A DNA stretch of 64,000 nt from NCBI RefSeq assembly GCF_902459465.1, contig NC_047082.1, forward strand, positions 8,680,001-8,744,000, read 5' to 3'. Position 1 is the first letter of the stretch, and each line of letters begins with the position of its first letter. The notes beneath the pieces are model-generated. The model was not told the DNA's origin and ran no database searches. It saw nothing but the letters and a program-made list of their open reading frames with translations. The position numbers and the translations under genes were made by a program. Positions 33,401-57,200 of the stretch are shown here, piece by piece. The stretch is from Asterias rubens (taxonomy: Eukaryota).

Positions 33401-36400
33401 AAACAGATAGCAGACGACGCAATCGACCTCTGCAAAAAACAGTAAGTAGTTTATGAGATAATTATTCAGCTGATTAGAATATTCATTATTCAGTATTTCA
33501 CATGTTGGATGATTTAGTTGGCTGGTGCACAAACCTAAAATGGATTTCTAATTAATTATTCAGACAACCGGTTAAATATTCATGAGAAGTTTGTGGTCAA
33601 GGCGCCTGGGAATAAATAATTTGAACCTTTTGAATAAACATGAAGTAGTATGAATGTTAAAGGAACATGTTGCCTTGGATGGGACGAGATGGTCTATACA
33701 AAGCGTTTGTAACCATGGTAACCATTTGTTATAAAATGCATATGATTGGAAAGATGTTTTAAAAGTAAAATAGAATGATCCACACAAATTTGCCTCGAAA
33801 TTACGTGGTTTTCCTTTTACATTGCGAACTAACATGGTCGGCCATTTATGGGAGTCAAAAATTTGACTCCCATAAATTGCCCGACAATGTTAGTCGACGA
33901 GGTTAAAGGAAAACCGTGCTATTTCGAGGCATGTTTGTGTGGATCATTGTATTCTAGTTTTACAACATCTTTTCAACCATATGCATTTAATAACAAACGG
34001 TTACAAACGCTTTCAAAGACCAACTCGACCGATCCAAGGCAACGTGTTCCTTTAATAAGTGTATGAGGAATGAAGTATCAGGCGTGATACTTCTTTGAGG
34101 CGACGAAGGCGATTGCCTCCATGCCCCCTGGTCATTGTCTTGGTGTCCTTGAAATACGGCAGTAAGGTGCCGCCGTGGTGCCCTTGCCCTTTTATCAACA
34201 AAGCATAAAGGCTTGAAGTATCAGGATTTTATCTTGCAGAAAAAATTTCCTATTTGGATATAAAGGAATGACAGAAAATGTCAAAATTTCAGAAAAGGAA
34301 TACAGCGCCCCAGTTACTGGGTCTACTTAAGACCTTTGAACGTTAAGGTTATGTAGCAAATTTTGTTTGTACAACAAGTCAATAATGCAAGCTTGTTTTA
34401 TGTATCTATTGATATGGACTCTTTTTATTATAAATAAAACAACTAAATTGTTGTGTTTGTTCTTGTTTTTATTTTTATTCTTATTTATTTACTTGTTTTT
34501 TGGGGAGGGGCCTTGACATGTAAGCAGTTTTTTTTTGGTTCGTGGAAATTAAAAACCACTGAGGCTGAACTAAAAGCATGTTTTTATGTCCAAAAATGAT
34601 TAAGTCTAAATTCTCTTTCAGGTTGAAGTGTGATTAAGCTTTAACAACCCAAAGCCAATTTTCCAATATATTGCAGGCAATGCAGCGTTAAATGAGACAT
34701 GCCTTTCCTGTAATGTTGATGACAAAGTGTAATTATACCTGTGTAGTCTGGCTGGAAGAAATGTCTGAACAGGGCAATATTTTGACAAGTTTGTTAATTT
34801 ATTGGCGAGTCATGGCTGAACGGTCAAGGGCATCGTAGCTCAGGTGTTTTGGGTCAGCTGATTGTGGGTTCATGCCGCATAACAGTTAAAGGAACATTAC
34901 AGAATTGGTTTTGCAAACAAAATAGTTGCTGGCAGTGTAAGCAACCATAGTTGTAATCCACCATATACATAAACTGACAAACCTGTAGAAGTTTGAAAGC
35001 CATCGACGATCTGGGTCAAAAGAAAATAGTGAAAAAAAAAACGATTTAAATGCATTTTGCTTGACATTGATGCAAAACAGAAATGAATAAAACGCTCACT
35101 GAAGGTGAGCGATAAACCCCAAACGCGAATCAAATTTGACATTTCAGACAGAAATGTTTCAAATGATGTTTTAAACTCCCATCATCTTTAGACCGTGTAA
35201 GTTTTGTGTACACCTGTGATCTTCTTGTTTTTTTGTTTCTTACCAATTCTGTAAAGTTCCTTTAAGACGAAGTACACTGGTAGTAAAAAAAGGCAAAATA
35301 TATATCAAAGCCTTATGCCAAACAAACAAAAAAAAACAGTTGTTTGCCCCTTCCTCATCCTGAGGTGCAAATGGTGATGAAATTATTACCCGCCTTTGAA
35401 ACAGGCTTGAAGAAATAATGCAACAATTGATCATCTTCGTTTATTTAGTTTATTTACATTATTGTTTATCTTTGGGCATTTCCAACAACTTTATAAGACA
35501 AAATTTGTATACAATTAAAAGGTCTGCTGATAACACAAAATTGAACTCAATATGTTGTAAAGTTAAAACCATCCTCCAGACAATCAAAATTATATCCAAA
35601 TATTACCAGACAAAGATTGTGCACATTAATCTTTAATAAGGTGCAGTGAGCCAATTGCAGAGGTTTTAAAGGTCAACTTTTAAAAATCCACTTAATTTTA
35701 ATATTTTTGCAATTAATAAGCATATAAAGCCACTGGACACCTTATGTAGACCAGTCTTCTCACTTAGTGTATCACACTTAATATGCATAAAATAAAAAAC
35801 CTGTGAAAATTTGAACTCAACTGGTTGTCAAAGTTTTTAGAGAATTGTGGAGGAAAAAAACAACGTTGTTGTGCAAGTTGTGTGCTTTCAGATATATGCC
35901 TGATAAAAGGCTTCAAGTATTTTGAGAAATTACCTCCTTCTCTTATAAAAATATGATGCTTCAGATGAGGGAGTAGTTTTCTACAATGTTTTGTACTATA
36001 AACAGCTCTCCATTGCTCATTAACAAGTAACTTTTTATGTTAACATGTATTTTCAATTTATTACCAATATAAAGTTCAGAGCCTTTTGTATGTATACAAT
36101 ATAAAGTAATAAATTAAAAGTAAAGTTTTTTTGGGCATCCTATTAAAGCTGTACATTAATAAATGCTGCCTTTGTGCCCCGACGTTTGACAGGTTTACAA
36201 TCCATTTCTTGCGATGTTTGATTCGCTGTAGCAGGGGCAATGGTAGCCTTACAACACGGGAAGTAAGGGTTCAACAACCGCTTTGTGGCAGAACGAAACG
36301 AGTGGTTGAAAAAACAATATATGAACACATTGAAGAAGCTGTTGCATATCGCGAAACCCTTTGTGATGAAAATGAGCCAGTTCTTCAATTGTTTCTGGTT

Positions 36401-39400
36401 TATCGCAGCAATGATCCGTGCAACTCGTAACGGCGTCCAGCAGACGGCAAACAGAACAGTTATAACGAGGAACGACCGCAGTGCCTTGTTGTCGAGGAAA
36501 TTAGGATCGTTTTTACAGTCTTTGTTTTTGTTCAACATCACGGCGTGATTTCGACTGAGCTTGATCAGCCGCCAGTAAATAAGAATCAGAACGATCAACG
36601 GTAAGATTACAAAGAACACTAAAATGGAGACTTCAAACAGTGGACCGTTGGAGCCCACGACACAGAGAAGTACAGCTTTAAAAATGAACTTGTCCGAGTC
36701 TTGCTGGATTAGCGAAAGGATTATCTGAAGTGCAAAGGATAAGATCGACAAGAGAACGACGAGGTTGATCACGCGATTCTTAGCGCAAAGACTTGGGAAT
36801 TGAAATGGCATCGTCACGGCGATGTATCGCTCAGCGTTCATCAATACAATCAGAATGATCGACATACAACAACAGGTTGCATCCAGAGTAGCGTTGATCG
36901 AACAGTACAACTCACCGAAAGGCCAGAAGTTGAACGCCGATGCGATGACATTCGGTAGGGAAATAACACCGGTTAGGAGATCATAAGCTGCGAGAGATAT
37001 CATGAGCACTTTCGTGCTGTCCGCAAGTTTGGGCATACTGCGCGTAACAGTGATTGATAACGCATTTCCTGAAATGATCATGAAGACGACAGCGGCAACG
37101 AAACAAGTCCGCAGAGCAATCAAATACGGCGACAGATATTCTTCCGCTGTAGTGTTATTCATCCTGAACTCTTGATTTCTTGAAAGAAGTAAATCCTTCT
37201 GTTCTTAAAATGTACTAAGTTCTTCTATAAAATGATCAATTCAAACGTCAACAAGAAAAGTTTTCCCCTTCGTAAGCACTTGATTACTTGCTAAGATAGC
37301 TTCCTCAAACGTTAGCTCCTAAGAAAAGTACAAGTAAAGTCTAGTTCCCTAACTTCTTCTTTCTTTCGTAGGCACTTGACATTCAGCAAAGACTGTTTAT
37401 ATTACTCCATTTGTGTTTTTGTTTTGTCTGCAACAAGCATGGGCTTTTCTGGTTATGCCCCCATTTCCAATTCTCCGCTTACTGTTCTTTCTTATCTTTA
37501 TTTTAATTCTCTGTTGGAATGGAAATAAAATGAGATGAAAGAAGTCTTCGTTCACAACACTGATTGTTACTGTCGACGGACGTCCAAAACTACAATGGAG
37601 ATCCTATTTCAAGTGTATGAAAAGTTTTCTCTCCACATCACAGCTGCCGTGTTAGTTTGCCTTCAAGCCTCACTTTCAAACAGGCTGAAAAGTGTCTTTC
37701 AGATGAAAGCAATACTCGTAGAAACTTCTCCAATCCGGCAAAATAAGATGAAGTGTCCTTTTGAATCAGGAGCCAATATATTTGTCAACAGTGGTAGCCA
37801 ATGGTTCGATTACTTTCCTATTGACAAAATACAACAGTCGTTACTGAAGTTTGACGATCATTCGCCATTAACATCTTGCAAACATCCCTCAAAATATTAC
37901 CATGCACGAAACACACCCATTTTATATTTGATAATGTATTGTCGCTCAACCGATGACACAGCTCTATAGAGATAGTCCAACAGGTGAATTGCGATTAGAA
38001 GTTTTGACATACATCAGTAGCTTTTATGGTTTAAACCATAAAGAAGGCAATTAAGCCAATTAAATGTTTCGATCAGTTCTTGTCAGCTTCATTTATTGCT
38101 CTTGCCTCTTTTTCCTCGCTGATCAAAATGTCAGCTTCACGCTTGATTCTGATTGGTCGGTGTCCCCCTCATAGTCGTTGGTAAACGCTGCATTGTTTCC
38201 CCTCTTTATTCAGCTCATCCACGCTGCCCCTATTAAGTATTGATGTTTCTAACAGGTTTTCTCTTAAGAAATTAATCGGATGCGGGTAAATTGCTTGTTG
38301 AGTTGCCTTGAACGGGTACATGTTTGGAAAAAGGCCCTTGTGCATTGAGTAATTTACTCATAACAACCAAATGGATCACCAGCCAGAACTATGCGTAATG
38401 TACCTTTTATTGGGGGGGGGGGGAGGCTGCTCATTTCGACCTATAAAGATAATGTCACTGCACTTTTTTGTTCATTGTTGGTTAAAAAAAAGTACATGGT
38501 GCATGAACAAATGAATGTTACCATGGTGATGCAAAATTAGCAATGGATAAAAAAAAATTCAGTTTCATTTATGCTTGTGACAGTTAAAAGGACACTTTGC
38601 CTTGGATCAAGTTTTTCTATGAAAAGAGTTGGAAAATGTTTTTTTGTAAAGATAATGCCTTTATGTTATGGTTAGAAAGATGTTTTAAAAGTAGAATTAA
38701 TAATCCACACAAACATGCCTGGAAATTGCACGGTTTTCCTAAGTTGTGAACCAACACGGTATGCCAATCTTTTGAGTCAAATCATTTTTTTTACTCCACA
38801 AACTGGCAGACCGTGTTAGTATTTGAAGTAAAAGCAGATAATTTTGTTTTTTTTGTGAAACGCTAGGACCTATTTATTCTACTTTTATAGTTTTAAAACA
38901 TCATTTCTAACCATTATGCGTTTGAAATGGTTTCAAACACTTTTCACAGACAAACTCGACCTATCCAATGCAACGTGTCTCTTTAATATAGACCTTTAGC
39001 ATTGACCTGTAAGCTTATAACTATGGAAACGTTCAGTGATGCTGATAATCTACATACATGTAACAAAATTATGAGCTGTCTCCTAAAACCAATGGTTAAT
39101 TAAGCCTATTAGTAAACAAATTTATTGCCTTGGTGACAATAACAAAAAAGTGCGTTGAGCCATTAGCAATATTCTCAATAATTCCTGGGGGAAAAATTAC
39201 ATAGTTAGTAAGATGTGAATGGGAGTCAATTTGTTTATTGTTTCACTTACCATGGTTACACACTGAACAGCGCAGCGCGAAGAAAAACAAAAATAAGAAA
39301 ATTTGTTCAGTTTTCGATGTGGGAAGAAAACCCTTTTGGAGAAAAAAAAAGCAATAAGGGACTGAAAACCATTGAAAGGCTCCCTCAAATCAGTAAAAGG

Positions 39401-42400: not shown

Positions 42401-45400
42401 TGTTCTGTAGGTACAGTCGCAAGTCGCTGAGAGTTCTTGGGACTGTAGGCGAGCCCATAAACCCAGAGGCGTGGTTGTTTTATTACAACGTCATCGGAGA
42501 TGGTAGATGTGCAATCAGCGACACCTTCTGGCAAACAGAAACGGTAAGATGATGGAACGATAAATCCAGTCACTAAAGCAGGGATGTGATTCCTCCGCTT
42601 TTAACCAGAAATCCTTTTTTGTTTTACCTCCACCCCCAAGAATAAATAAATAAATAAACAATTTACAACATACAAAAAATTTTGTTGAAGTTTTGTGTTG
42701 TACATTTTTTGTTGTCTAAATATTATTCCTTTACCATGGTTACAGGGAGGTCATACTGTGACTGCGCTACCAGGCTGTACACCCATGAAACCTGGATCAG
42801 CAGTAAGTTGTTCAGATTTTGTTGTTGACTGTTGTACGTTCAAATGTTAATGTCAACAAGTTATGTATCATTTTGGAGAGGAAACACTCTTTCCAGCCAT
42901 GATACTCTTGTCAAATTTGGTGTATGTTCAGTATTTTTTACTATTATCCAAGAAGCAACTTTTCTTTTTTCAGTTGTTCAAGTATCTTATTTTCTTGTTT
43001 CGTCCATTTAACTCTAGATTATCATAATGGCAGCTATTAAAGTAAGAAAGTCTGATATCATAAAAAAGAAAATTGTGTCCGGTATAACATTATAATACAA
43101 AGTGTTTTTGGTGGTGATTGCATTATTTATTAGATAAATATTTTCAGAAGTGTGAGTGAACATTGCGTGTATGTGCAGGGGCTTAGGCACATACAAGCTT
43201 TGATGGATTAAAAGTAGTACTTTATTTTAAAAACTGGCCTTTAAACATATATCGTAGTAGAACTCAGTAGCTGAACACAAGAGATCAAACAAATTGAGCA
43301 TTTTTAGAAGTCTTGATTGGTAACCAAAAACTCAATTGTTTTGTTTGTGTTGTAGTCCTTTCCATTCTTTGGGATTGACCCTGCTGTGGTTGACGAGAAT
43401 GGTGAAGAACTCAGTGGAGCGTGCGAAGGATATCTGGTAAGTTAGAAAGCAGGCAGGCCATGCTTCGTTTTTGAAGGATGCTTGATAGTCAAAGACTGTA
43501 CCACGTTTGGAACAATTCAAATCTAAACTTAAAACCCATCTTTTTAAATGCGCTATACAAGAACTGCTTTTTATTATTATTACTTATAATTTGTCACTAG
43601 GTCTTCAAGAGGCCATGGCCCGGAGTAATGAGGACTGTGTACGGAGACCATGCTCGCTATGAAGGAACTTACTTCAAACAATTCCCTGGATACTACAAGA
43701 CTGGAGACGGTAAGAAACTCAACTTGACCCAATTTCATGGCTCTGCTTACCGTAAGCAAAGAAGCTTACGGAAGCAGGGAATGCTGCGCTAACGTCGAGC
43801 ATGTTTCACGGTAAACAGGAAGTTTGTGCTCGTGTGTGTGCAGACTCCCCATTATAGGCATCCTTTGCTTACGCAGTAATATGGCGCGTGCACAGTAAGC
43901 CTAGAATGCAGAATTGGCGGTAAGCAGAGCCATGATATCAACGGTTGTTTTCCCTTGTTTCTCTTGATGTCTTTCTAATATACATTAACAAACAGTAGCC
44001 AAGAACACAAGTAACCAAGAACACTGTTTTTATCCCAGCATAAAACTTAAACCCTGTTCAAGTTCTTGTCATGTTTAGGCTGCCAATATATCTGTTCATA
44101 AAACTCAAACCATGTTTTCTTGTCATGTTTAGGCTGCCAATATATCTGTTCATAAAACTCAAACCATGTTTTCTTGTCATGTTTAGGCTGCCAATATATC
44201 TGTTCATAAAACTCAAACCATGTTTTCTTGTCATGTTTAGGCTGCCAATATATCTGTTCATAAAACTCAAACCATGTTTTCTTGTCATGTTTAGGCTGCC
44301 AATATATCTGTTCATAAAACTCTAACCCCATTTTCTTGTCATGTTAAGGCAATCAACATACTTAGTACATAAAACTCAAACCCCATTTTCTTGTCATGTT
44401 AAGGCAACCAACATACTTAGTACATAAAACTCAAACCCTGTTTTCTTGTCATGTTAAGGCAATCAACATACTTAGTACATAAAACTCAAACCCTGTTTTC
44501 TTGTCATGTTAAGGCAACCAACATACTTAGTACATAAAACTCAAACCCTGTTTTCTTGTCATGTTAAGGCAATCAACATACTTAGTACATAAAACTCAAA
44601 CCCTGTTTTCTTGTCATGTTAAGGCAATCAACATACTTAGTACATAAAACTCAAACCCTGTTTTCTTGTCATGTTAAGGCAACCAACATACTTGTACATA
44701 AAACTCAAACCCCATTTTCTTGTCATGTTAAGGCAATCAACATACTTAGTACATAAAACTCAAACCCTGTTTTCTTGTCATGTTAAGGCAATCAACATAC
44801 TTAGTACATAAAACTCAAACCCTGTTTTCTTGTCATGTTAAGGCAATCAACATACTTGTACATAAAACTCAAACCCCATTTTCTTGTCATGTTAAGGCAA
44901 TCAACATACTTTGTACATAAAACTCAAACCCTGTTTTCTTGTCATGTTAAGGCAATCAACATGCTTAGTACATAAAACTCTAACCCCATTTTCTTGTCAT
45001 GTTAAGGCAATCAACATACTTAGTACATAAAACTCTAACCCTGTTTTCTTGTCATGTTAAGGCAACCAACATACTAGTACATAAAACTCAAACCCTGTTT
45101 TCTTGTCATGTTAAGGCAACCAACATACTTAGTACATAAAACTCCAACCCCATTTTCTTGTCATGTTAAGGCAACCAACATACTTGTACATAAAACTCAA
45201 ACCCTGTTTTCTTGTCATGTTAAGGCAACCAACATACTTAGTACATAAAACTCAAACCCTGTTTTCTTGTCATGTTAAGGCAATCAACATACTTAGTACA
45301 TAAAACTCAAACCCTGTTTTCTTGTCATGTTAAGGCAATCAACATACTTAGTACATAAAACTCAAACCCTGTTTTCTTGTCATGTTAAGGCAATCAACAT

Positions 45401-48400
45401 ACTTAGTACATAAAACTCAAACCCTGTTTTCTTGTCATGTTAAGGCAACCAACATACTTAGTACATAAAACTCAAACCCTGTTTTCTTGTCATGTTAAGG
45501 CAATCAACATACTTAGTACATAAAACTCAAACCCTGTTTTCTTGTCATGTTAAGGCAACCAACATACTTAGTACATAAAACTCAAACCCTGTTTTCTTGT
45601 CATGTTAAGGCAATCAACATACTTAGTACATAAAACTCAAACCCTGTTTTCTTGTCATGTTAAGGCAACCAACATACTTAGTACATAAAACTCAAACCCT
45701 GTTTTCTTGTCATGTTAAGGCAACCAACATACTTAGTACATAAAACTCAAACCCTGTTTTCTTGTCATGTTAAGGCAATCAACATACTTAGTACATAAAA
45801 CTCAAACCCTGTTTTCTTGTCATGTTAAGGCAATCAACATACTTAGTACATAAAACTCTAACCCTGTTTTCTTGTCATGTTAAGGCAACCAACATACTTA
45901 GTACATAAAACTCAAACCCTGTTTTCTTGTCATGTTAAGGCAACCAACATACTTAGTACATAAAACTCAAACCCTGTTTTCTTGTCATGTTAAGGCAATC
46001 AACATACTTAGTACATAAAACTCAAACCCTGTTTTCTTGTCATGTTAAGGCAATCAACATACTTAGTACATAAAACTCTAACCCCATTTTCTTGTCATGT
46101 TAAGGCAACCAACATACTTAGTACATAAAACTCAAACCCTGTTTTCTTGTCATGTTAAGGCAACCAACATACTTAGTACATAAAACTCAAACCCTGTTTT
46201 CTTGTCATGTTAAGGCAATCAACATACTTAGTACATAAAACTCAAACCCTGTTTTCTTGTCATGTTAAGGCAACCAACATACTTAGTACATAAAACTCTA
46301 ACCCTGTTTTCTTGTCATGTTAAGGCAACCAACATACTTAGTACATAAAACTCAAACCCTGTTTTCTTGTCATGTTAAGGCAATCAACATACTTAGTACA
46401 TAAAACTCTAACCCTGTTTTCTTGTCATGTTAAGGCAACCAACATACTTAGTACATAAAACTCAAACCCTGTTTTCTTGTCATGTTAAGGCAACCAACAT
46501 ACTTAGTACATAAAACTCAAACCCTGTTTTCTTGTCATGTTAAGGCAATCAACATACTTAGTACATAAAACTCAAACCCTGTTTTCTTGTCATGTTAAGG
46601 CAATCAACATACTTAGTACATAAAACTCAAACCCTGTTTTCTTGTCATGTTAAGGCAATCAACATACTTGGTACATAAAACTCTAACCCCATTTTCTTGT
46701 CATGTTAAGGCAATCAACATACTTAGTACATAAAACTCAAACCCTGTTTTCTTGTCATGTTAAGGCAACCAACATACTTAGTACATAAAACTCCAACCCC
46801 ATTTTCTTGTCATGTTAAGGCAACCAACATACTTAGTACATAAAACTCTAACCCCATTTTCTTGTCATGTTAAGGCAATCAACATACTTAGTACATAAAA
46901 CTCAAACCCCATTTTCTTGTCATGTTAAGGCAATCAACATACTTAGTACATAAAACTCAAACCCTGTTTTCTTGTCATGTTAAGGCAATCAACATACTTG
47001 GTACATAAAACTCTAACCCCATTTTCTTGTCATGTTAAGGCAATCAACATACTTAGTACATAAAACTCAAACCCTGTTTTCTTGTCATGTTAAGGCAATC
47101 AACATACTTAGTACATAAAACTCAAACCCTGTTTTCTTGTCATGTTAAGGCAACCAACATACTTAGTACATAAAACTCCAACCCCATTTTCTTGTCATGT
47201 TAAGGCAACCAACATACTTAGTACATAAAACTCTAACCCCATTTTCTTGTCATGTTAAGGCAATCAACATACTTAGTACATAAAACTCAAACCCCATTTT
47301 CTTGTCATGTTAAGGCAATCAACATACTTAGTACATAAAACTCAAACCCCATTTTCTTGTCATGTTAAGGCAACCAACATACTTGTACATAAAACTCAAA
47401 CCCTGTTTTCTTGTCATGTTAAGGCAACCAACATACTTAGTACATAAAACTCAAACCCTGTTTTCTTGTCATGTTAAGGCAATCAACATACTTAGTACAT
47501 AAAACTCAAACCCTGTTTTCTTGTCATGTTAAGGCAATCAACATACTTAGTACATAAAACTCAAACCCTGTTTTCTTGTCATGTTAAGGCAATCAACATA
47601 CTTAGTACATAAAACTCAAACCCTGTTTTCTTGTCATGTTAAGGCAACCAACATACTTAGTACATAAAACTCAAACCCTGTTTTCTTGTCATGTTAAGGC
47701 AATCAACATACTTAGTACATAAAACTCAAACCCTGTTTTCTTGTCATGTTAAGGCAACCAACATACTTGTACATAAAACTCAAACCCTGTTTTCTTGTCA
47801 TGTTAAGGCAATCAACATACTTAGTACATAAAACTCAAACCCTGTTTTCTTGTCATGTTAAGGCAACCAACATACTTAGTACATAAAACTCAAACCCTGT
47901 TTTCTTGTCATGTTAAGGCAACCAACATACTTAGTACATAAAACTCAAACCCTGTTTTCTTGTCATGTTAAGGCAATCAACATACTTAGTACATAAAACT
48001 CAAACCCTGTTTTCTTGTCATGTTAAGGCAATCAACATACTTAGTACATAAAACTCTAACCCTGTTTTCTTGTCATGTTAAGGCAACCAACATACTTAGT
48101 ACATAAAACTCAAACCCTGTTTTCTTGTCATGTTAAGGCAACCAACATACTTAGTACATAAAACTCAAACCCTGTTTTCTTGTCATGTTAAGGCAATCAA
48201 CATACTTAGTACATAAAACTCAAACCCTGTTTTTTTGTCATGTTAAGGCAATCAACATACTTAGTACATAAAACTCTAACCCCATTTTCTTGTCATGTTA
48301 AGGCAACCAACATACTTAGTACATAAAACTCAAACCCTGTTTTCTTGTCATGTTAAGGCAACCAACATACTTAGTACATAAAACTCAAACCCTGTTTTCT

Positions 48401-51400
48401 TGTCATGTTAAGGCAATCAACATACTTAGTACATAAAATCAAACCCTGTTTTCTTGTCATGTTAAGGCAACCAACATACTTAGTACATAAAACTCTAACC
48501 CTGTTTTCTTGTCATGTTAAGGCAACCAACATACTTAGTACATAAAACTCAAACCCTGTTTTCTTGTCATGTTAAGGCAATCAACATACTTAGTACATAA
48601 AACTCTAACCCTGTTTTCTTGTCATGTTAAGGCAACCAACATACTTAGTACATAAAACTCAAACCCTGTTTTCTTGTCATGTTAAGGCAACCAACATACT
48701 TAGTACATAAAACTCAAACCCTGTTTTCTTGTCATGTTAAGGCAATCAACATACTTAGTACATAAAACTCAAACCCTGTTTTCTTGTCATGTTAAGGCAA
48801 TCAACATACTTAGTACATAAAACTCAAACCCTGTTTTCTTGTCATGTTAAGGCAATCAACATACTTGGTACATAAAACTCTAACCCCATTTTCTTGTCAT
48901 GTTAAGGCAATCAACATACTTAGTACATAAAACTCAAACCCTGTTTTCTTGTCATGTTAAGGCAACCAACATACTTAGTACATAAAACTCCAACCCCATT
49001 TTCTTGTCATGTTAAGGCAACCAACATACTTAGTACATAAAACTCTAACCCCATTTTCTTGTCATGTTAAGGCAATCAACATACTTAGTACATAAAACTC
49101 AAACCCATTTTCTTGTCATGTTAAGGCAATCAACATACTTAGTACATAAAACTCAAACCCTGTTTTCTTGTCATGTTAAGGCAATCAACATACTTGGTAC
49201 ATAAAACTCTAACCCCATTTTCTTGTCATGTTAAGGCAATCAACATACTTAGTACATAAAACTCAAACCCTGTTTTCTTGTCATGTTAAGGCAATCAACA
49301 TACTTAGTACATAAAACTCAAACCCTGTTTTCTTGTCATGTTAAGGCAACCAACATACTTAGTACATAAAACTCCAACCCCATTTTCTTGTCATGTTAAG
49401 GCAACCAACATACTTAGTACATAAAACTCTAACCCCATTTTCTTGTCATGTTAAGGCAATCAACATACTTAGTACATAAAACTCAAACCCCATTTTCTTG
49501 TCATGTTAAGGCAATCAACATACTTAGTACATAAAACTCAAACCCTGTTTTCTTGTCATGTTAAGGCAATCAACATACTTAGTACATAAAACTCTAACCC
49601 TGTTTTCTTGTCATGTTAAGGCAACCAACATACTTAGTACATAAAACTCAAACCCTGTTTTCTTGTCATGTTAAGGCAATCAACATACTTAGTACATAAA
49701 ACTCTAACCCTGTTTTCTTGTCATGTTAAGGCAACCAACATACTTAGTACATAAAACTCAAACCCTGTTTTCTTGTCATGTTAAGGCAATCAACATACTT
49801 AGTACATAAAACTCAAACCCTGTTTTCTTGTCATGTTAAGGCAATCAACATACTTGGTACATAAAACTCTAACCCCATTTTCTTGTCATGTTAAGGCAAT
49901 CAACATACTTAGTACATAAAACTCAAACCCTGTTTTCTTGTCATGTTAAGGCAACCAACATACTTAGTACATAAAACTCCAACCCCATTTTCTTGTCATG
50001 TTAAGGCAACCAACATACTTAGTACATAAAACTCTAACCCCATTTTCTTGTCATGTTAAGGCAATCAACATACTTAGTACATAAAACTCAAACCCTGTTT
50101 TCTTGTCATGTTAAGGCAATCAACATACTTAGTACATAAAACTCTAACCCCATTTTCTTGTCATGTTAAGGCAATCAACATACTTAGTACATAAAACTCA
50201 AACCCTGTTTTCTTGTCATGTTAAGGCAACCAACATACTTAGTACATAAAACTCAAACCCCATTTTCTTGTCATGTTAAGGCAATCAACATACTTAGTAC
50301 ATAAAACTCCAACCCCATTTTCTTGTCATGTTAAGGCAATCAACATACTTAGTACATAAAACTCTAACCCCATTTTCTTGTCATGTTAAGGCAACCAACA
50401 TACTTTGTACATAAAACTCAAACCCCATTTTCTTGTCATGTTAAGGCAATCAACATACTTAGTACATAAAACTCAAACCCCATTTTCTTGTCATGTTAAG
50501 GCAATCAACATACTTAGTACATAAAACTCTAACCCCATTTTCTTGTCATGTTAAGGCAACCAACATACTTTGTACATAAAACTCAAACCCTGTTTTCTTG
50601 TCATGTTAAGGCAATCAACATACTTAGTACATAAAACTCTAACCCTGTTTTCTTGTCATGTTAAGGCAACCAACATACTTAGTACATAAAACTCAAACCC
50701 TGTTTTCTTGTCATGTTAAGGCAATCAACATACTTAGTACATAAAACTCAAACCCTGTTTTCTTGTCATGTTAAGGCAACCAACATACTTAGTACATAAA
50801 ACTCTAACCCCATTTTCTTGTCATGTTAAGGCAACCAACATACTTTGTACATAAAACTCAAACCCTGTTTTCTTGTCATGTTAAGGCAATCAACATACTT
50901 AGTACATAAAACTCTAACCCTGTTTTCTTGTCATGTTAAGGCAACCAACATACTTAGTACATAAAACTCTAACCCCATTTTCTTGTCATGTTAAGGCAAC
51001 CAACATACTTAGTACATAAAACTCAAACCCTGTTTTCTTGTCATGTTTAGGCTGCCGTCGTGACGAAGACGGTTATTACTGGATCACTGGGCGTATTGAC
51101 GACATGTTCAATGTCTCTGGCCATCTCTTGAGTACAGCTCAGATTGAAGCATCTCTAATGGAGCACCCAAAGTGTGCGGAGGCTGCGGTGGTGGCCTACC
51201 CTCACAAGACTAAAGGAGAATGTTGCTACTGCTTCATCAGCCTGATTGAGGTCAGTTTAAAGAGATGTGGTTTCTCCGTTAGTAAGCGGAATTTCTTTTT
51301 TTCTTTTTTGCCCCGAAAAGAAGAAAATTACAGGTTGTTTTTATCCGTCCCCCAAAAAAAATAAAAATAAAAAATAAAAATAAAAAAAATTCAGAAACAC

Positions 51401-52029
51401 CATGTGTATTTAATTTGCTGTGTAGAAACAATATCCCTCGATGTGTATTTAAAAAATATTGATTAGTACATGTAACTTTTTCTTTTTTAATTAGGGAGCC
51501 GAGTTCACAGAGGAACTTGTTCACCAACTCAAAGATATGGGTAAGCTTCTTAAAGATGAAATATTATTTGCTTTTAACTAGCTCTCATTTATGGACTGTC
51601 CTCTCTTTTGCAGAGGGCACTTCATCAGATTTAATATAGTTGTGGTAATCAATGTAACAGACATGTAGTAATTATTTGTCAAACTGTCTCTGTTTTTTTT
51701 TTTTTTTTACAAAGCTGGAATATAAATACCTGTTTACGTTGTGTTACTCTGTGACTAAGTGGTTTTGTTTTGGTGGGTTTTTTTTTTCTTCGATAGTGCG
51801 TACAAAGATTGGCCCATTCGCTGCGCCGGACGTTCTTCAGAATGCTCCGGGCTTGCCAAAGACGCGCTCGGGGAAAATCATGCGCCGCGTTCTACGCAAG
51901 ATAGCGCGTAACGACCACGACCTGGGAGACGTCAGCACCATGGCCGATTCAACGGTCGTTGAGGTTCTATTTGCCAATCGACCCGACGTGGAGAAGTGGT
52001 CGGGATTGCACAACCAGATTGTCCTGTAG
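27452..52029 (+). CDS. ACSS2: Acetyl-CoA synthetase, cytoplasmic/nuclear (ACSS2), 16 exons, 698 aa
   Basis: Exons 27452-27789, 29544-29635, 30288-30391, 31111-31183, 33366-33441, 39831-39942, 40480-40595, 41419-41611, 41949-42082, 42411-42543, 42746-42802, 43356-43436, 43601-43709, 51051-51250, 51495-51540, 51797-52029. All GT-AG and phase-consistent (2097 nt). Motifs [60 protein letters not shown]. Confidence 0.96.
28890..29067. mobile_element. GGCCCAATTTCAT-type MITE (related copies ~9315-9480, ~18475-18740, ~43736-43935)
   Basis: GGCCCAATTTCA...TGAAACTTGGCCC inverted termini; recurring interior GCTAAGCA / GACACCAGTCACAA. Confidence 0.65.
30880..31080 (-). mobile_element. tRNA-derived SINE interrupted by a ~90-bp inverted-repeat insert
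   Basis: Minus strand: GGCGTGTCCTGACCGAGCGGTTAAGAGCAC (A box) ... GGGTTCGAGTCCCGGTCATG (B box); insert TGGGGTGCGTTT...AAACGCACCCCA at ~30944-31034. Confidence 0.65.
32340..32520 (+). mobile_element. tRNA-derived SINE
   Basis: A box TAGTCTAGTTGG, B box GGTTCGAATCC, no closing acceptor stem; shared body with other copies. Confidence 0.75.
32679..32971. mobile_element. MITE nested inside a family-A MITE
   Basis: TIR TATTTTTGACCGCGCGAGGGCGCT / AGCGCCCTCACGCGGTCAAAAATA interrupts the host sequence GGTAAT|TGTCAAAGACC. Confidence 0.75.
33657..34055. mobile_element. TTAA-flanked near-palindromic MITE, family C
   Basis: TTAAAGGAACATGTTGCCTTGGAT...ATCCAAGGCAACGTGTTCCTTTAA; central TTTATGGGAGTCAAAAATTTGACTCCCATAAA. 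Confidence 0.85.
36143..37162 (-). CDS. Intronless class A (rhodopsin-like) GPCR, aminergic/trace-amine-like orphan, 339 aa, nested in ACSS2 intron 5
   Basis: 7 hydrophobic segments; N-terminal N-glycosylation sequons (NNT, NTT); TM1 GN, TM2 [11 protein letters not shown]1 [10 protein letters not shown]3 Asp at 3.32 and ERY, TM6 CWTP, TM7 NSFFNVFIY. Confidence 0.93.
   Translation of the reverse strand: MNNTTAEEYLSPYLIALRTCFVAAVVFMIISGNALSITVTRSMPKLADSTKVLMISLAAYDLLTGVISLPNVIASAFNFWPFGELYCSINATLDATCCCMSIILIVLMNAERYIAVTMPFQFPSLCAKNRVINLVVLLSILSFALQIILSLIQQDSDKFIFKAVLLCVVGSNGPLFEVSILVFFVILPLIVLILIYWRLIKLSRNHAVMLNKNKDCKNDPNFLDNKALRSFLVITVLFAVCWTPLRVARIIAAINQKQLKNWLIFITKGFAICNSFFNVFIYCFFNHSFRSATKRLLNPYFPCCKATIAPATANQTSQEMDCKPVKRRGTKAAFINVQL
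38585..38987. mobile_element. Diverged family-C TTAA MITE
   Basis: TTAAAAGGACACTTTGCCTTGGATC...ATCCAATGCAACGTGTCTCTTTAA. Confidence 0.7.
40134..40355. mobile_element. TA-flanked MITE (TAGACTTGTGGACAAGTCG termini); older interrupted copy ~9253-9601
   Basis: TAGACTTGTGGACAAGTCGTTTAATG / CATTAACGACTTGTCCACAAGTCTA inverted termini. Confidence 0.75.
40615..40892. repeat. ~130-bp tandem duplication just downstream of the ACSS2 exon 7 donor
   Basis: (TTC)n-TTTCTAGTA..TCTTCATGATTGAAGATAGTCGCACTGCCTGACACACTGAGACG...TTGACAGGACCTACAGCTGTAA at 40621 and 40751. Confidence 0.85.
40919..41308. mobile_element. TTAA-flanked near-palindromic MITE, family C
   Basis: Perfect TIR TTAAAGGAACACGTTGCCTTGGATCGG; whole element largely self-complementary. 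Confidence 0.88.
44045..51056 (+). repeat. ~7-kb minisatellite (5 x 54 bp plus ~122 x 55 bp) built from the ACSS2 intron 13 3' splice site
   Basis: Main unit ATGTTAAGGCAAYCAACATACTTAGTACATAAAACTCWAACCCYRTTTTCTTGTC from 44341; 54-bp ATGTTTAG|GCTGCC units at 44071-44340; the array runs into the true acceptor ...TTTTCTTGTCATGTTTAG|GCTGCCGT at 51050/51051. Confidence 0.97.
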
Positions 52030-52101
52030 AGTCATTCTGTAGAGTCATTCTGTAGAGTCTTTATGTAGAGTCATTCTGTAGAGTCATTCTGTAGAGTCAT
52101 C
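52024..52101 (+). repeat. 13-bp tandem repeat (CTGTAGAGTCATT) x6 starting at the ACSS2 last codon and stop
   Basis: Units start at 52024, 52037, 52050, 52063, 52076 and 52089; the first unit contains CTG TAG. Confidence 0.9.
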
Positions 52102-56964: not shown

Positions 56965-57200
56965 GAAGGTCCCCCTCCTTGGTCAAAGGTTTTCCCCCTC
57001 CTTGGTCAAAGGTTTACCCCCTCCTTGGTCAAAGGTTTCCCCCTCCCTTAGTCCAAGGTTCCCCCTCCTCCCCCAAGGTTTCCCCCTCCTCCCCCAAGGT
57101 TCCCCCTCCTCCCCAAGGTTTTCCCCCTCCCTAGTTAAAGGTTTTCCCCCTCCCTAGTCCAAGGTTTCCCCCACCCTAAGATTTTTCCCCTCCCCAACCC
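56965..57200 (-). repeat. Degenerate ~20-23-bp G-rich (minus strand) tandem repeat in the RPA2 3' region
   Basis: About 10-11 units of AGGTT(T)CCCCCTCC(TTGGTCA/TCCCC)A on + strand, i.e. GGGGAGGAGGGGG-type runs on the RPA2 sense strand. Confidence 0.85.

What the first reader, a model, noticed from the sequence alone, without database searches (positions are those of the whole stretch)
44045..51056. A 7-kb minisatellite made of ~127 copies of ACSS2's own splice acceptor
Seen: the repeat unit is the last ~35 nt of intron 13 (CTCWAAC branch-point-like motif, CCCTGTTTTCTTGTC pyrimidine tract, ATGTT(T/A)AG) plus exon-start-like bases. The array terminates exactly at the genuine acceptor TTTAG|GCTGCC (51050/51051). 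In about 122 copies the -3 base is A (AAG) instead of T (TAG). Established: -3 preference at 3' splice sites is C>T>A>G, and exon definition needs a nearby downstream donor, which only the last copy has. Inference: the spliceosome must skip a very long field of near-complete decoy acceptors, so the array could act as a U2AF/SF1 sponge, slow or tune ACSS2 splicing, or be a VNTR-type splicing QTL on a central acetyl-CoA enzyme.
Basis: partly seen in the sequence, partly recalled or inferred. Interest (0 to 1): 0.8.

Follow-up and report, generated by a model that had tools for sequence, protein, structure and literature searches.

The report
Splice-acceptor minisatellite in starfish ACSS2 intron
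Intron 13 of the common starfish's acetyl-CoA synthetase gene holds 128 head-to-tail copies of its own splice acceptor, a very large, recently expanded example of the known "mirage" type of repeat, and nothing found here shows that it regulates the gene.

Summary
A 55-bp minisatellite of 128 units (window 44039-51056) fills intron 13 of Asterias rubens ACSS2-like. Its last unit supplies the true acceptor, TTTAG|GCTGCC at 51050/51051. Five units at the 5' edge copy that acceptor plus six exon bases. The other 122 carry TTAAG|GCAAYC.

The sister species A. amurensis has only about 7 units at the same spot. There the true acceptor is the "weak" AAG and the decoys are TAG, so the -3 base does not decide which site is used. 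The last few A. rubens decoys also lie 255-475 nt from the exon 14 donor, so "only the last copy has a nearby donor" is too strong. Patiria and Acanthaster have short introns, CAG acceptors and no array.

Most of the array is younger than the Asterias species split. It includes a 2.2-kb block duplicated at 99.6% identity.

This is a tandem repeat spanning an intron/exon boundary, already described as "mirages" in amphioxus; a donor-side parallel is the human F7 IVS7 VNTR. This scan has noted the same kind of repeat at other loci of this genome. The likeliest reading is a near-neutral unstable repeat, with the exon-proximal acceptor chosen through exon context. RNA-level use of the decoys could not be tested.

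The parts
43601..43709 (+). ACSS2-like coding exon 13 (109 nt), donor GACG|GTAAGA
   Evidence: Exact rebuild of the A. rubens RefSeq protein P0368 from 16 exons. The exon size is the same in four sea stars.
43710..44038 (+). Unique 5' part of intron 13 (329 nt)
   Evidence: Aligns to the A. amurensis intron at 88.8% identity. It ends just before unit 1.
44039..44312 (+). Units 1-5, old type: complete acceptor copies TTTAG|GCTGCC followed by AATATATCTGTT. The first decoy boundary is at 44078|44079.
   Evidence: These units are closest to A. amurensis unit 5, with 4 differences. If used, the reading frame gives GCQYICS then a stop.
44313..51014 (+). Units 6-127, the A. rubens-specific amplified type: TTAAG|GCAA(T/C)C followed by AACATACTTAGTA, 55 bp
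   Evidence: Mean pairwise difference is 2.06 per unit. If used, the frame gives GNQHT then a stop.
45212..49607 (+). Two adjacent copies of a 40-unit (2.2 kb) block inside the array: 45212-47410 and 47411-49607
   Evidence: 99.6% identical (5 mismatches, 4 gap columns), against 96% for a control pair at the same offset.
51015..51050 (+). Intronic part of the terminal unit: the working branch-point region (CTCAAAC), pyrimidine tract and TTTAG acceptor
   Evidence: The nearest upstream AG is only 38 nt away, so the branch point must lie inside this unit.
51051..51250 (+). Coding exon 14 (200 nt). It starts GCTGCC, and its donor is GAG|GTCAGT.
   Evidence: The exon 14 protein stretch aligns at 100% identity to the A. 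amurensis protein.

Best explanation
This is a 'mirage'-type minisatellite: an unstable tandem repeat seeded by a small duplication that spanned the intron 13/exon 14 boundary of ACSS2-like.

A short array of about 5-7 units already existed in the common ancestor of Asterias rubens and A. amurensis. In the A. rubens lineage one variant unit was then amplified to about 122 copies, by replication slippage or unequal exchange, including a recent 40-unit block duplication. This inflated a roughly 0.7-kb intron to 7.3 kb.

It most likely has no designed function. The productive mRNA uses the exon-proximal (last) acceptor. That site is the only unit followed by real exon 14 sequence and by its donor at the native 200-nt spacing, so the choice rests on exon context, not on acceptor strength. 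Use of any decoy meets a stop codon within 5-7 codons and would probably be removed by nonsense-mediated decay.

Shown: the anatomy, the gene model, the species comparison, and the lack of a sequence difference between the true site and some decoys. Inferred: the mutational mechanism, selection through exon context, decay of decoy products, and neutrality.
For: - Array anatomy.
- The window is identical to A. rubens LR699112.1, and the RefSeq protein requires the junction 43709|51051.
- A. amurensis has 6.3-7 units at the orthologous position in a 692-nt intron. Patiria miniata (768-nt intron) and Acanthaster planci (280-nt intron) have CAG acceptors and no boundary repeat.
- Units differ from each other less (3.7%; 0.4% for the block duplication) than the unique intron 13 flank does between the species (about 11%; the exon 14-exon 15 stretch differs by about 5%).
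- A position weight matrix built from 58 sea-star ACSS2 acceptors scores the A. rubens true site at 8.8, its TAG decoys at 8.8 and its AAG decoys at 6.2-6.6. The A. amurensis true site scores 4.1, below its own decoys at 8.3-9.6.
- Apart from five weak TTG|GTACAT sites that only match the weakest real donors, nothing in the array scores like a donor.
- A spliced cDNA-like contig from a related sea star shows the same junction.
- The class is described in the literature: mirages in amphioxus are said not to disturb splicing (PMC3087553 and PMC3902484), and F7 IVS7 donor pseudo-sites stay silent (PMC1557585).
Against: - No RNA-seq or transcript assembly from Asterias could be reached for this gene. 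Low-level decoy use, slower splicing or loss through decay are therefore untested.
- The RefSeq junction comes from a computed gene model.
- Neutrality is an inference. The five full-strength decoys lie only about 370-590 nt from the exon 13 donor and are transcribed first, so some mis-splicing cost is plausible.
- The exact copy number rests on a single assembly.
Confidence: 0.78

Rival explanations
1. The array is a working modulator of ACSS2. In this reading 127 decoy branch-point/U2AF sites delay or divert splicing, creating decay-prone products. Expression would then depend on copy number, making the array a VNTR splicing QTL or a local factor sink.
For: - Each unit is a self-contained 3' splice-site module scoring within the range of real acceptors, and above 95% of random intronic AGs.
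- Units 2-5 are indistinguishable from the true site.
- Copy number differs 18-fold between sister species.
Against: - No expression or junction data are available.
- The same gene works in A. amurensis with 7 units, and in Patiria and Acanthaster with none.
- The amplified units carry no conserved feature beyond what they inherited from the acceptor.
- Amphioxus mirages and the F7 pseudo-sites are reported as silent.
- A genome-wide sponge effect from one gene's intron is quantitatively implausible (inference).
Confidence: 0.1
2. The array is real, but its length in this assembly is wrong: some units, for example the 40-unit block, were duplicated or collapsed by the assembler.
For: Two adjacent 2.2-kb blocks are 99.6% identical. 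Long, near-identical repeats are hard to assemble. The amphioxus globin paper notes a mis-assembled mirage in a draft genome.
Against: - The units carry a patterned set of variants, not perfect identity.
- The two blocks still differ at 5 substitutions and 2 indels.
- An orthologous small array in A. amurensis shows the locus really is repeat-prone.
Confidence: 0.15
3. The repeat is a satellite carried in by a transposable element, or an array of small RNA genes, that only happens to abut the exon.
For: None found. This was considered because intronic tandem arrays sometimes derive from mobile elements or encode snoRNAs or miRNAs.
Against: - Units contain the first six coding bases of exon 14. 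The homology runs through the real acceptor in both Asterias species.
- No copy occurs elsewhere in the 64-kb window.
- No Rfam match at E<=1.
- Three units fold no better than shuffled sequence, z = +1.29.
- Stop codons interrupt the 55-bp units in all frames.
Confidence: 0.02

Closest known systems
Amphioxus 'mirage' minisatellites (Adh3, globins BflGb6 and BflGb9, troponin C, PGBD5)
   Same: Tandem repeats whose unit spans an intron/exon boundary and so copies a splice signal plus some exon bases. The authentic site sits at the edge of the array. They are reported as unstable in length and as not disturbing normal splicing (PMC3087553 and PMC3902484).
   Different: This one is in an echinoderm, not a cephalochordate. 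Only 6 exon bases are copied. The copy number (128 units, 7 kb) is far above the 3-6 units given for the globin example. The amplified subfamily has drifted away from the exon bases (GCAAYC).
Human F7 intron 7 37-bp VNTR (donor pseudo-sites)
   Same: A minisatellite whose exon-proximal unit spans the exon boundary, so the true splice site is followed by identical pseudo-sites that stay silent. The exon-proximal site is the one chosen (PMC1557585).
   Different: That repeat is on the donor side, with far fewer copies, and has been dissected experimentally. Here the repeat is on the acceptor side and no experiment exists.
Other splice-site minisatellites noted by this scan in the same A. rubens genome (MRPS18A, a P450 gene, others)
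   Same: The same architecture: tandem copies of a gene's own intron/exon junction, with the true site last. The notes report these as silent in assembled transcripts (I did not check those loci).
   Different: Those arrays have about 11-18 copies. This one has 128, and it now has a sister-species comparison.

Membership tests
Mirage-type minisatellite (tandem repeat of an exon/intron boundary) | Head-to-tail repeat with a minisatellite-sized unit | tested here: met
   Period 55, 127.7 copies, 96% matches; 128 units parsed.
Mirage-type minisatellite (tandem repeat of an exon/intron boundary) | The unit spans the boundary: a splice signal plus exon bases | tested here: met
   Units 1-5 and the A. 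amurensis units carry TTTAG|GCTGCC, which is the acceptor plus the first 6 coding bases. The derived units keep 4 of those 6.
Mirage-type minisatellite (tandem repeat of an exon/intron boundary) | The authentic boundary is the terminal unit of the array | tested here: met
   Unit 128 is the true acceptor at 51050|51051. The protein is rebuilt exactly across this junction.
Mirage-type minisatellite (tandem repeat of an exon/intron boundary) | Normal splicing is not disturbed; decoys are not used in the mRNA | tested here: inconclusive
   The RefSeq protein models of both Asterias species, and a spliced contig from a relative, use the true junction. No Asterias RNA-seq or transcript assembly was reachable.
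Mirage-type minisatellite (tandem repeat of an exon/intron boundary) | Length instability | tested here: met
   Shown between species only: 128 units in A. rubens against about 7 in A. amurensis, plus a recent 40-unit block duplication. Variation within the species could not be tested.
Functional decoy-site array or splicing-QTL VNTR | Decoy use or gene output depends on copy number | not testable with these tools
   This needs junction-level RNA data and genotypes from several individuals.
   The A. amurensis true site is AAG (score 4.1) while its decoys are TAG (8.3-9.6). The A. rubens TAG decoys score the same as the true site.

The most novel reading that the evidence does not exclude
Exon-edge minisatellites in Asterias may not be random. 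Both sizeable arrays inside ACSS2 sit exactly on a coding edge: one on the exon 14 acceptor, the other on the last codons plus the stop. This holds in both species, with opposite copy-number changes.

That pattern could reflect a mutational process targeted at exon edges. It could also mean that array length measurably tunes ACSS2 output through decoy splicing and nonsense-mediated decay.
Probability: 0.08. Interest if true: 0.65.

Novelty: new member of a known kind. Interest (0 to 1): 0.3.

Why it matters
The finding is mainly descriptive. It extends "mirage" boundary minisatellites from amphioxus to a sea star, with an unusually large example of 128 units and 7 kb. It also shows an 18-fold growth since two sister species split.

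Its most useful aspect is as a natural experiment on 3' splice-site choice. Complete branch-point, tract and AG modules, some identical to the true site, lie upstream of it. In the sister species the true site is the weaker one. Position next to the exon, not site strength, must therefore decide which acceptor is used. Minigenes could test that directly.

Nothing found here indicates any effect on acetyl-CoA metabolism.

Tried and rejected
- **Exon 14 reading frame (108 aa) against the 5.8-billion protein collection.** Only fragments at 82% identity or less came back, none from a sea star.
- **Exon 14 against the representative library.** This gave only distant or badly predicted ACSS2 proteins (P0111, P0151).
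- **Aligning all 15 exon peptides to a scaffold protein.** The alignment came out scrambled. A reduced alignment (A3) worked and recovered the Asterias cluster.
- **The full A. rubens protein as query.** I was looking for transcript-derived or truncated decoy-spliced products. No Asterias transcript assemblies turned up, so RNA-level use remains untested.
- **Cañestro et al. 2002, the original mirage paper.** It is not held in the library, so I cite it only through PMC3087553.
- **Small-RNA array idea.** Rejected: no Rfam hit and no stable fold.
- **Coding repeat idea.** Rejected: stops in all frames of the 55-bp units. Only the five 54-bp units give short, chance open frames.
- **Transposon satellite idea.** Rejected because the unit contains exon bases and is absent from the rest of the window.
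- **MaxEntScan.** Not available, so I used a crude position weight matrix from 58 acceptors of the same gene in four sea stars. Its scores are only relative.
Full report
**Observation**

Tandem Repeats Finder reports one array at 44039-51052: period 55, 127.7 copies, 96% matches. Parsing on the invariant core TTGTCATGTT gives 128 units.

- Units 1-5 (44039-44312; one of 58 bp, four of 54 bp) read ...CTCAAACCATGTTTTCTTGTCATGTTTAG|GCTGCC AATATATCTGTT. Units 2-5 copy the true acceptor from -36 to +6 with a single difference.
- Units 6-127 (44313-51014) read ...TTAAG|GCAA(T/C)C AACATACTTAGTA.
- Unit 128 is the true acceptor, TTTAG|GCTGCCGTCG, and the exon starts at 51051.

The core motif occurs 127 times in the window, all inside the array, against 0.01 expected by chance.

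**Gene and organism**

Window positions 26452-53029 are identical to Asterias rubens LR699112.1:8706452-8733029. The RefSeq protein named [quoted passage not shown] (P0368, 698 aa) can be rebuilt exactly from 16 coding exons:

| Exon | Window coordinates |
|---|---|
| 13 | 43601-43709 |
| 14 | 51051-51250 |
| 15 | 51495-51540 |
| 16 | 51797-52029 |

The protein reads ...YYKTGDG|[10 protein letters not shown]..., which requires the junction 43709|51051. "Intron 13" is therefore correct in coding-exon numbering, and the intron is 7341 nt long.

**What each unit is**

The nearest AG upstream of the true acceptor is 38 nt away, in unit 127. The working branch point must therefore lie inside the last unit. 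By the same logic every unit is a self-contained module of branch point, pyrimidine tract and AG.

I built a crude position weight matrix from 58 real acceptors of this gene in four sea stars.

| Site | Score |
|---|---|
| A. rubens true site | 8.8 |
| A. rubens TAG decoys, units 2-5 | 8.8 |
| A. rubens AAG decoys | 6.2-6.6 |
| 95th percentile of 3658 other intronic AGs | 5.6 |

The AAG decoys also score above 9-14 of the 60 real sites. AAG itself is used at 4 of those 60 real acceptors.

Apart from five TTG|GTACAT sites that only match the weakest real donors, nothing in the array scores like a donor. No pseudo-exon can therefore be framed inside it.

Use of a TAG decoy gives GCQYICS then a stop. 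Use of an AAG decoy gives GNQHT then a stop (read directly from the sequence).

**Related species**

| Species | Intron 13 length | Array at the acceptor | True acceptor |
|---|---|---|---|
| A. rubens | 7341 nt | 128 units | TTTAG |
| A. amurensis (locus L001) | 692 nt | 6.3-7 units, same unit, same position | TTAAG |
| Patiria miniata | 768 nt | none; only an unrelated degenerate repeat in mid-intron | CAG |
| Acanthaster planci | 280 nt | none | CAG |

In A. amurensis the true acceptor is CCCCATTATCTTGTCATGTTAAG|GCTGCCGTCG, with A at -3. Five upstream decoys carry T(T)TTAG, and one has lost its AG. The matrix scores the true site at 4.1 and the decoys at 8.3-9.6. The -3 base therefore cannot be what separates true from decoy. 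Position next to exon 14 is the only consistent difference.

The A. rubens 5' units are closest to A. amurensis unit 5, with 4 differences. The amplified A. rubens type is 7-14 differences from every A. amurensis decoy unit. A small array therefore predates the species split, and the 122-copy subfamily is specific to A. rubens.

- The unique intron 13 flank differs by about 11% between the two species; the exon 14-intron 14-exon 15 stretch, which is about half coding, differs by 5%.
- The amplified units differ from each other by 3.7% on average.
- A 40-unit block (45212-47410 against 47411-49607) is 99.6% identical, against 96% for a control pair at the same offset.

The expansion is therefore young and proceeded partly by large unequal exchange, or, less likely, the block is an assembly duplication.

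**RNA evidence**

I could reach only indirect evidence. The RefSeq models of both Asterias species use the true junction. A 1978-bp intronless contig from a related sea star (L005, about 90% nucleotide identity) is spliced at exactly the same junctions, exon 9 through exon 16. Three protein searches found no Asterias transcript assemblies and no truncated decoy-spliced products. This absence says little, because no canonical transcript assemblies were found either.

**Rivals**

- A transposon-borne satellite is unlikely. The unit contains exon bases and is absent from the rest of the window.
- A functional decoy, sponge or QTL role remains possible but has no support. The gene works with 0, 7 or 128 units in related species.

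**Comparison with what is known**

Tandem repeats that span an exon/intron boundary were named "mirages" in amphioxus. They have been reported for Adh3, globins, troponin C and PGBD5, as unstable in length and as not interfering with splicing (PMC3087553 and PMC3902484).

The human F7 intron 7 VNTR is the donor-side equivalent. Identical pseudo-sites follow the true donor, and the exon-proximal site is the one used (PMC1557585).

Earlier notes of this scan describe several smaller splice-site minisatellites elsewhere in this same genome. Those notes gave me the "mirage" lead, which I checked in the papers, and the species identity, which I checked by sequence.

**Verdict**

This is a new and very large member of a known kind, with one instructive twist: the TAG/AAG assignment of true site and decoys is swapped between sister species. 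Interest is modest.

Noticed in passing
window 52024-52100; L001 21549-21889: A second repeat sits on a coding edge of the same gene. A 13-bp unit (CTGTAGAGTCATT, 5.9 copies) begins at the last codon plus the stop codon of ACSS2. A. amurensis has a 14-bp version in 25.3 copies at the same place. The spliced contig from a related sea star (L005) lacks it.
   Followed up: partly
window 36143-37162 (minus strand): A 339-aa intronless open reading frame is nested in the large intron 5 of ACSS2. The orthologous loci of A. amurensis, Patiria and Acanthaster carry a called gene of 336-339 aa with 7tm_1 (GPCR) hits at the same position, but none is listed for the A. rubens locus.
   Followed up: partly
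L005 (GCA_014845345.1, contig of 1978 bp): An intronless, cDNA-like copy of ACSS2 exons 9-16 plus 3' UTR from a related sea star sits in a 'genome' assembly, with a frame break near position 312. It could be a processed pseudogene or cDNA contamination.
   Followed up: no
window 44047-44331: The five 54-bp units (54 = 18 x 3) create chance open frames of 84-94 aa on both strands. These could be mis-called as genes.
   Followed up: yes
window 56970-57172: A 23-bp repeat (TCCCCCTCCTTAGTCCAAGGTT, 9.3 copies, 86% matches) lies downstream of ACSS2. Its context was not examined.
   Followed up: no
window 46642, 46972, 48839, 49168 and 49828 (units 48, 54, 88, 94 and 106): The variant ACTTGGTAC creates a weak donor-like TTG|GTACAT 16 nt after the AAG decoy. 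Its score of 4.1 only matches the weakest real donors of this gene.
   Followed up: partly
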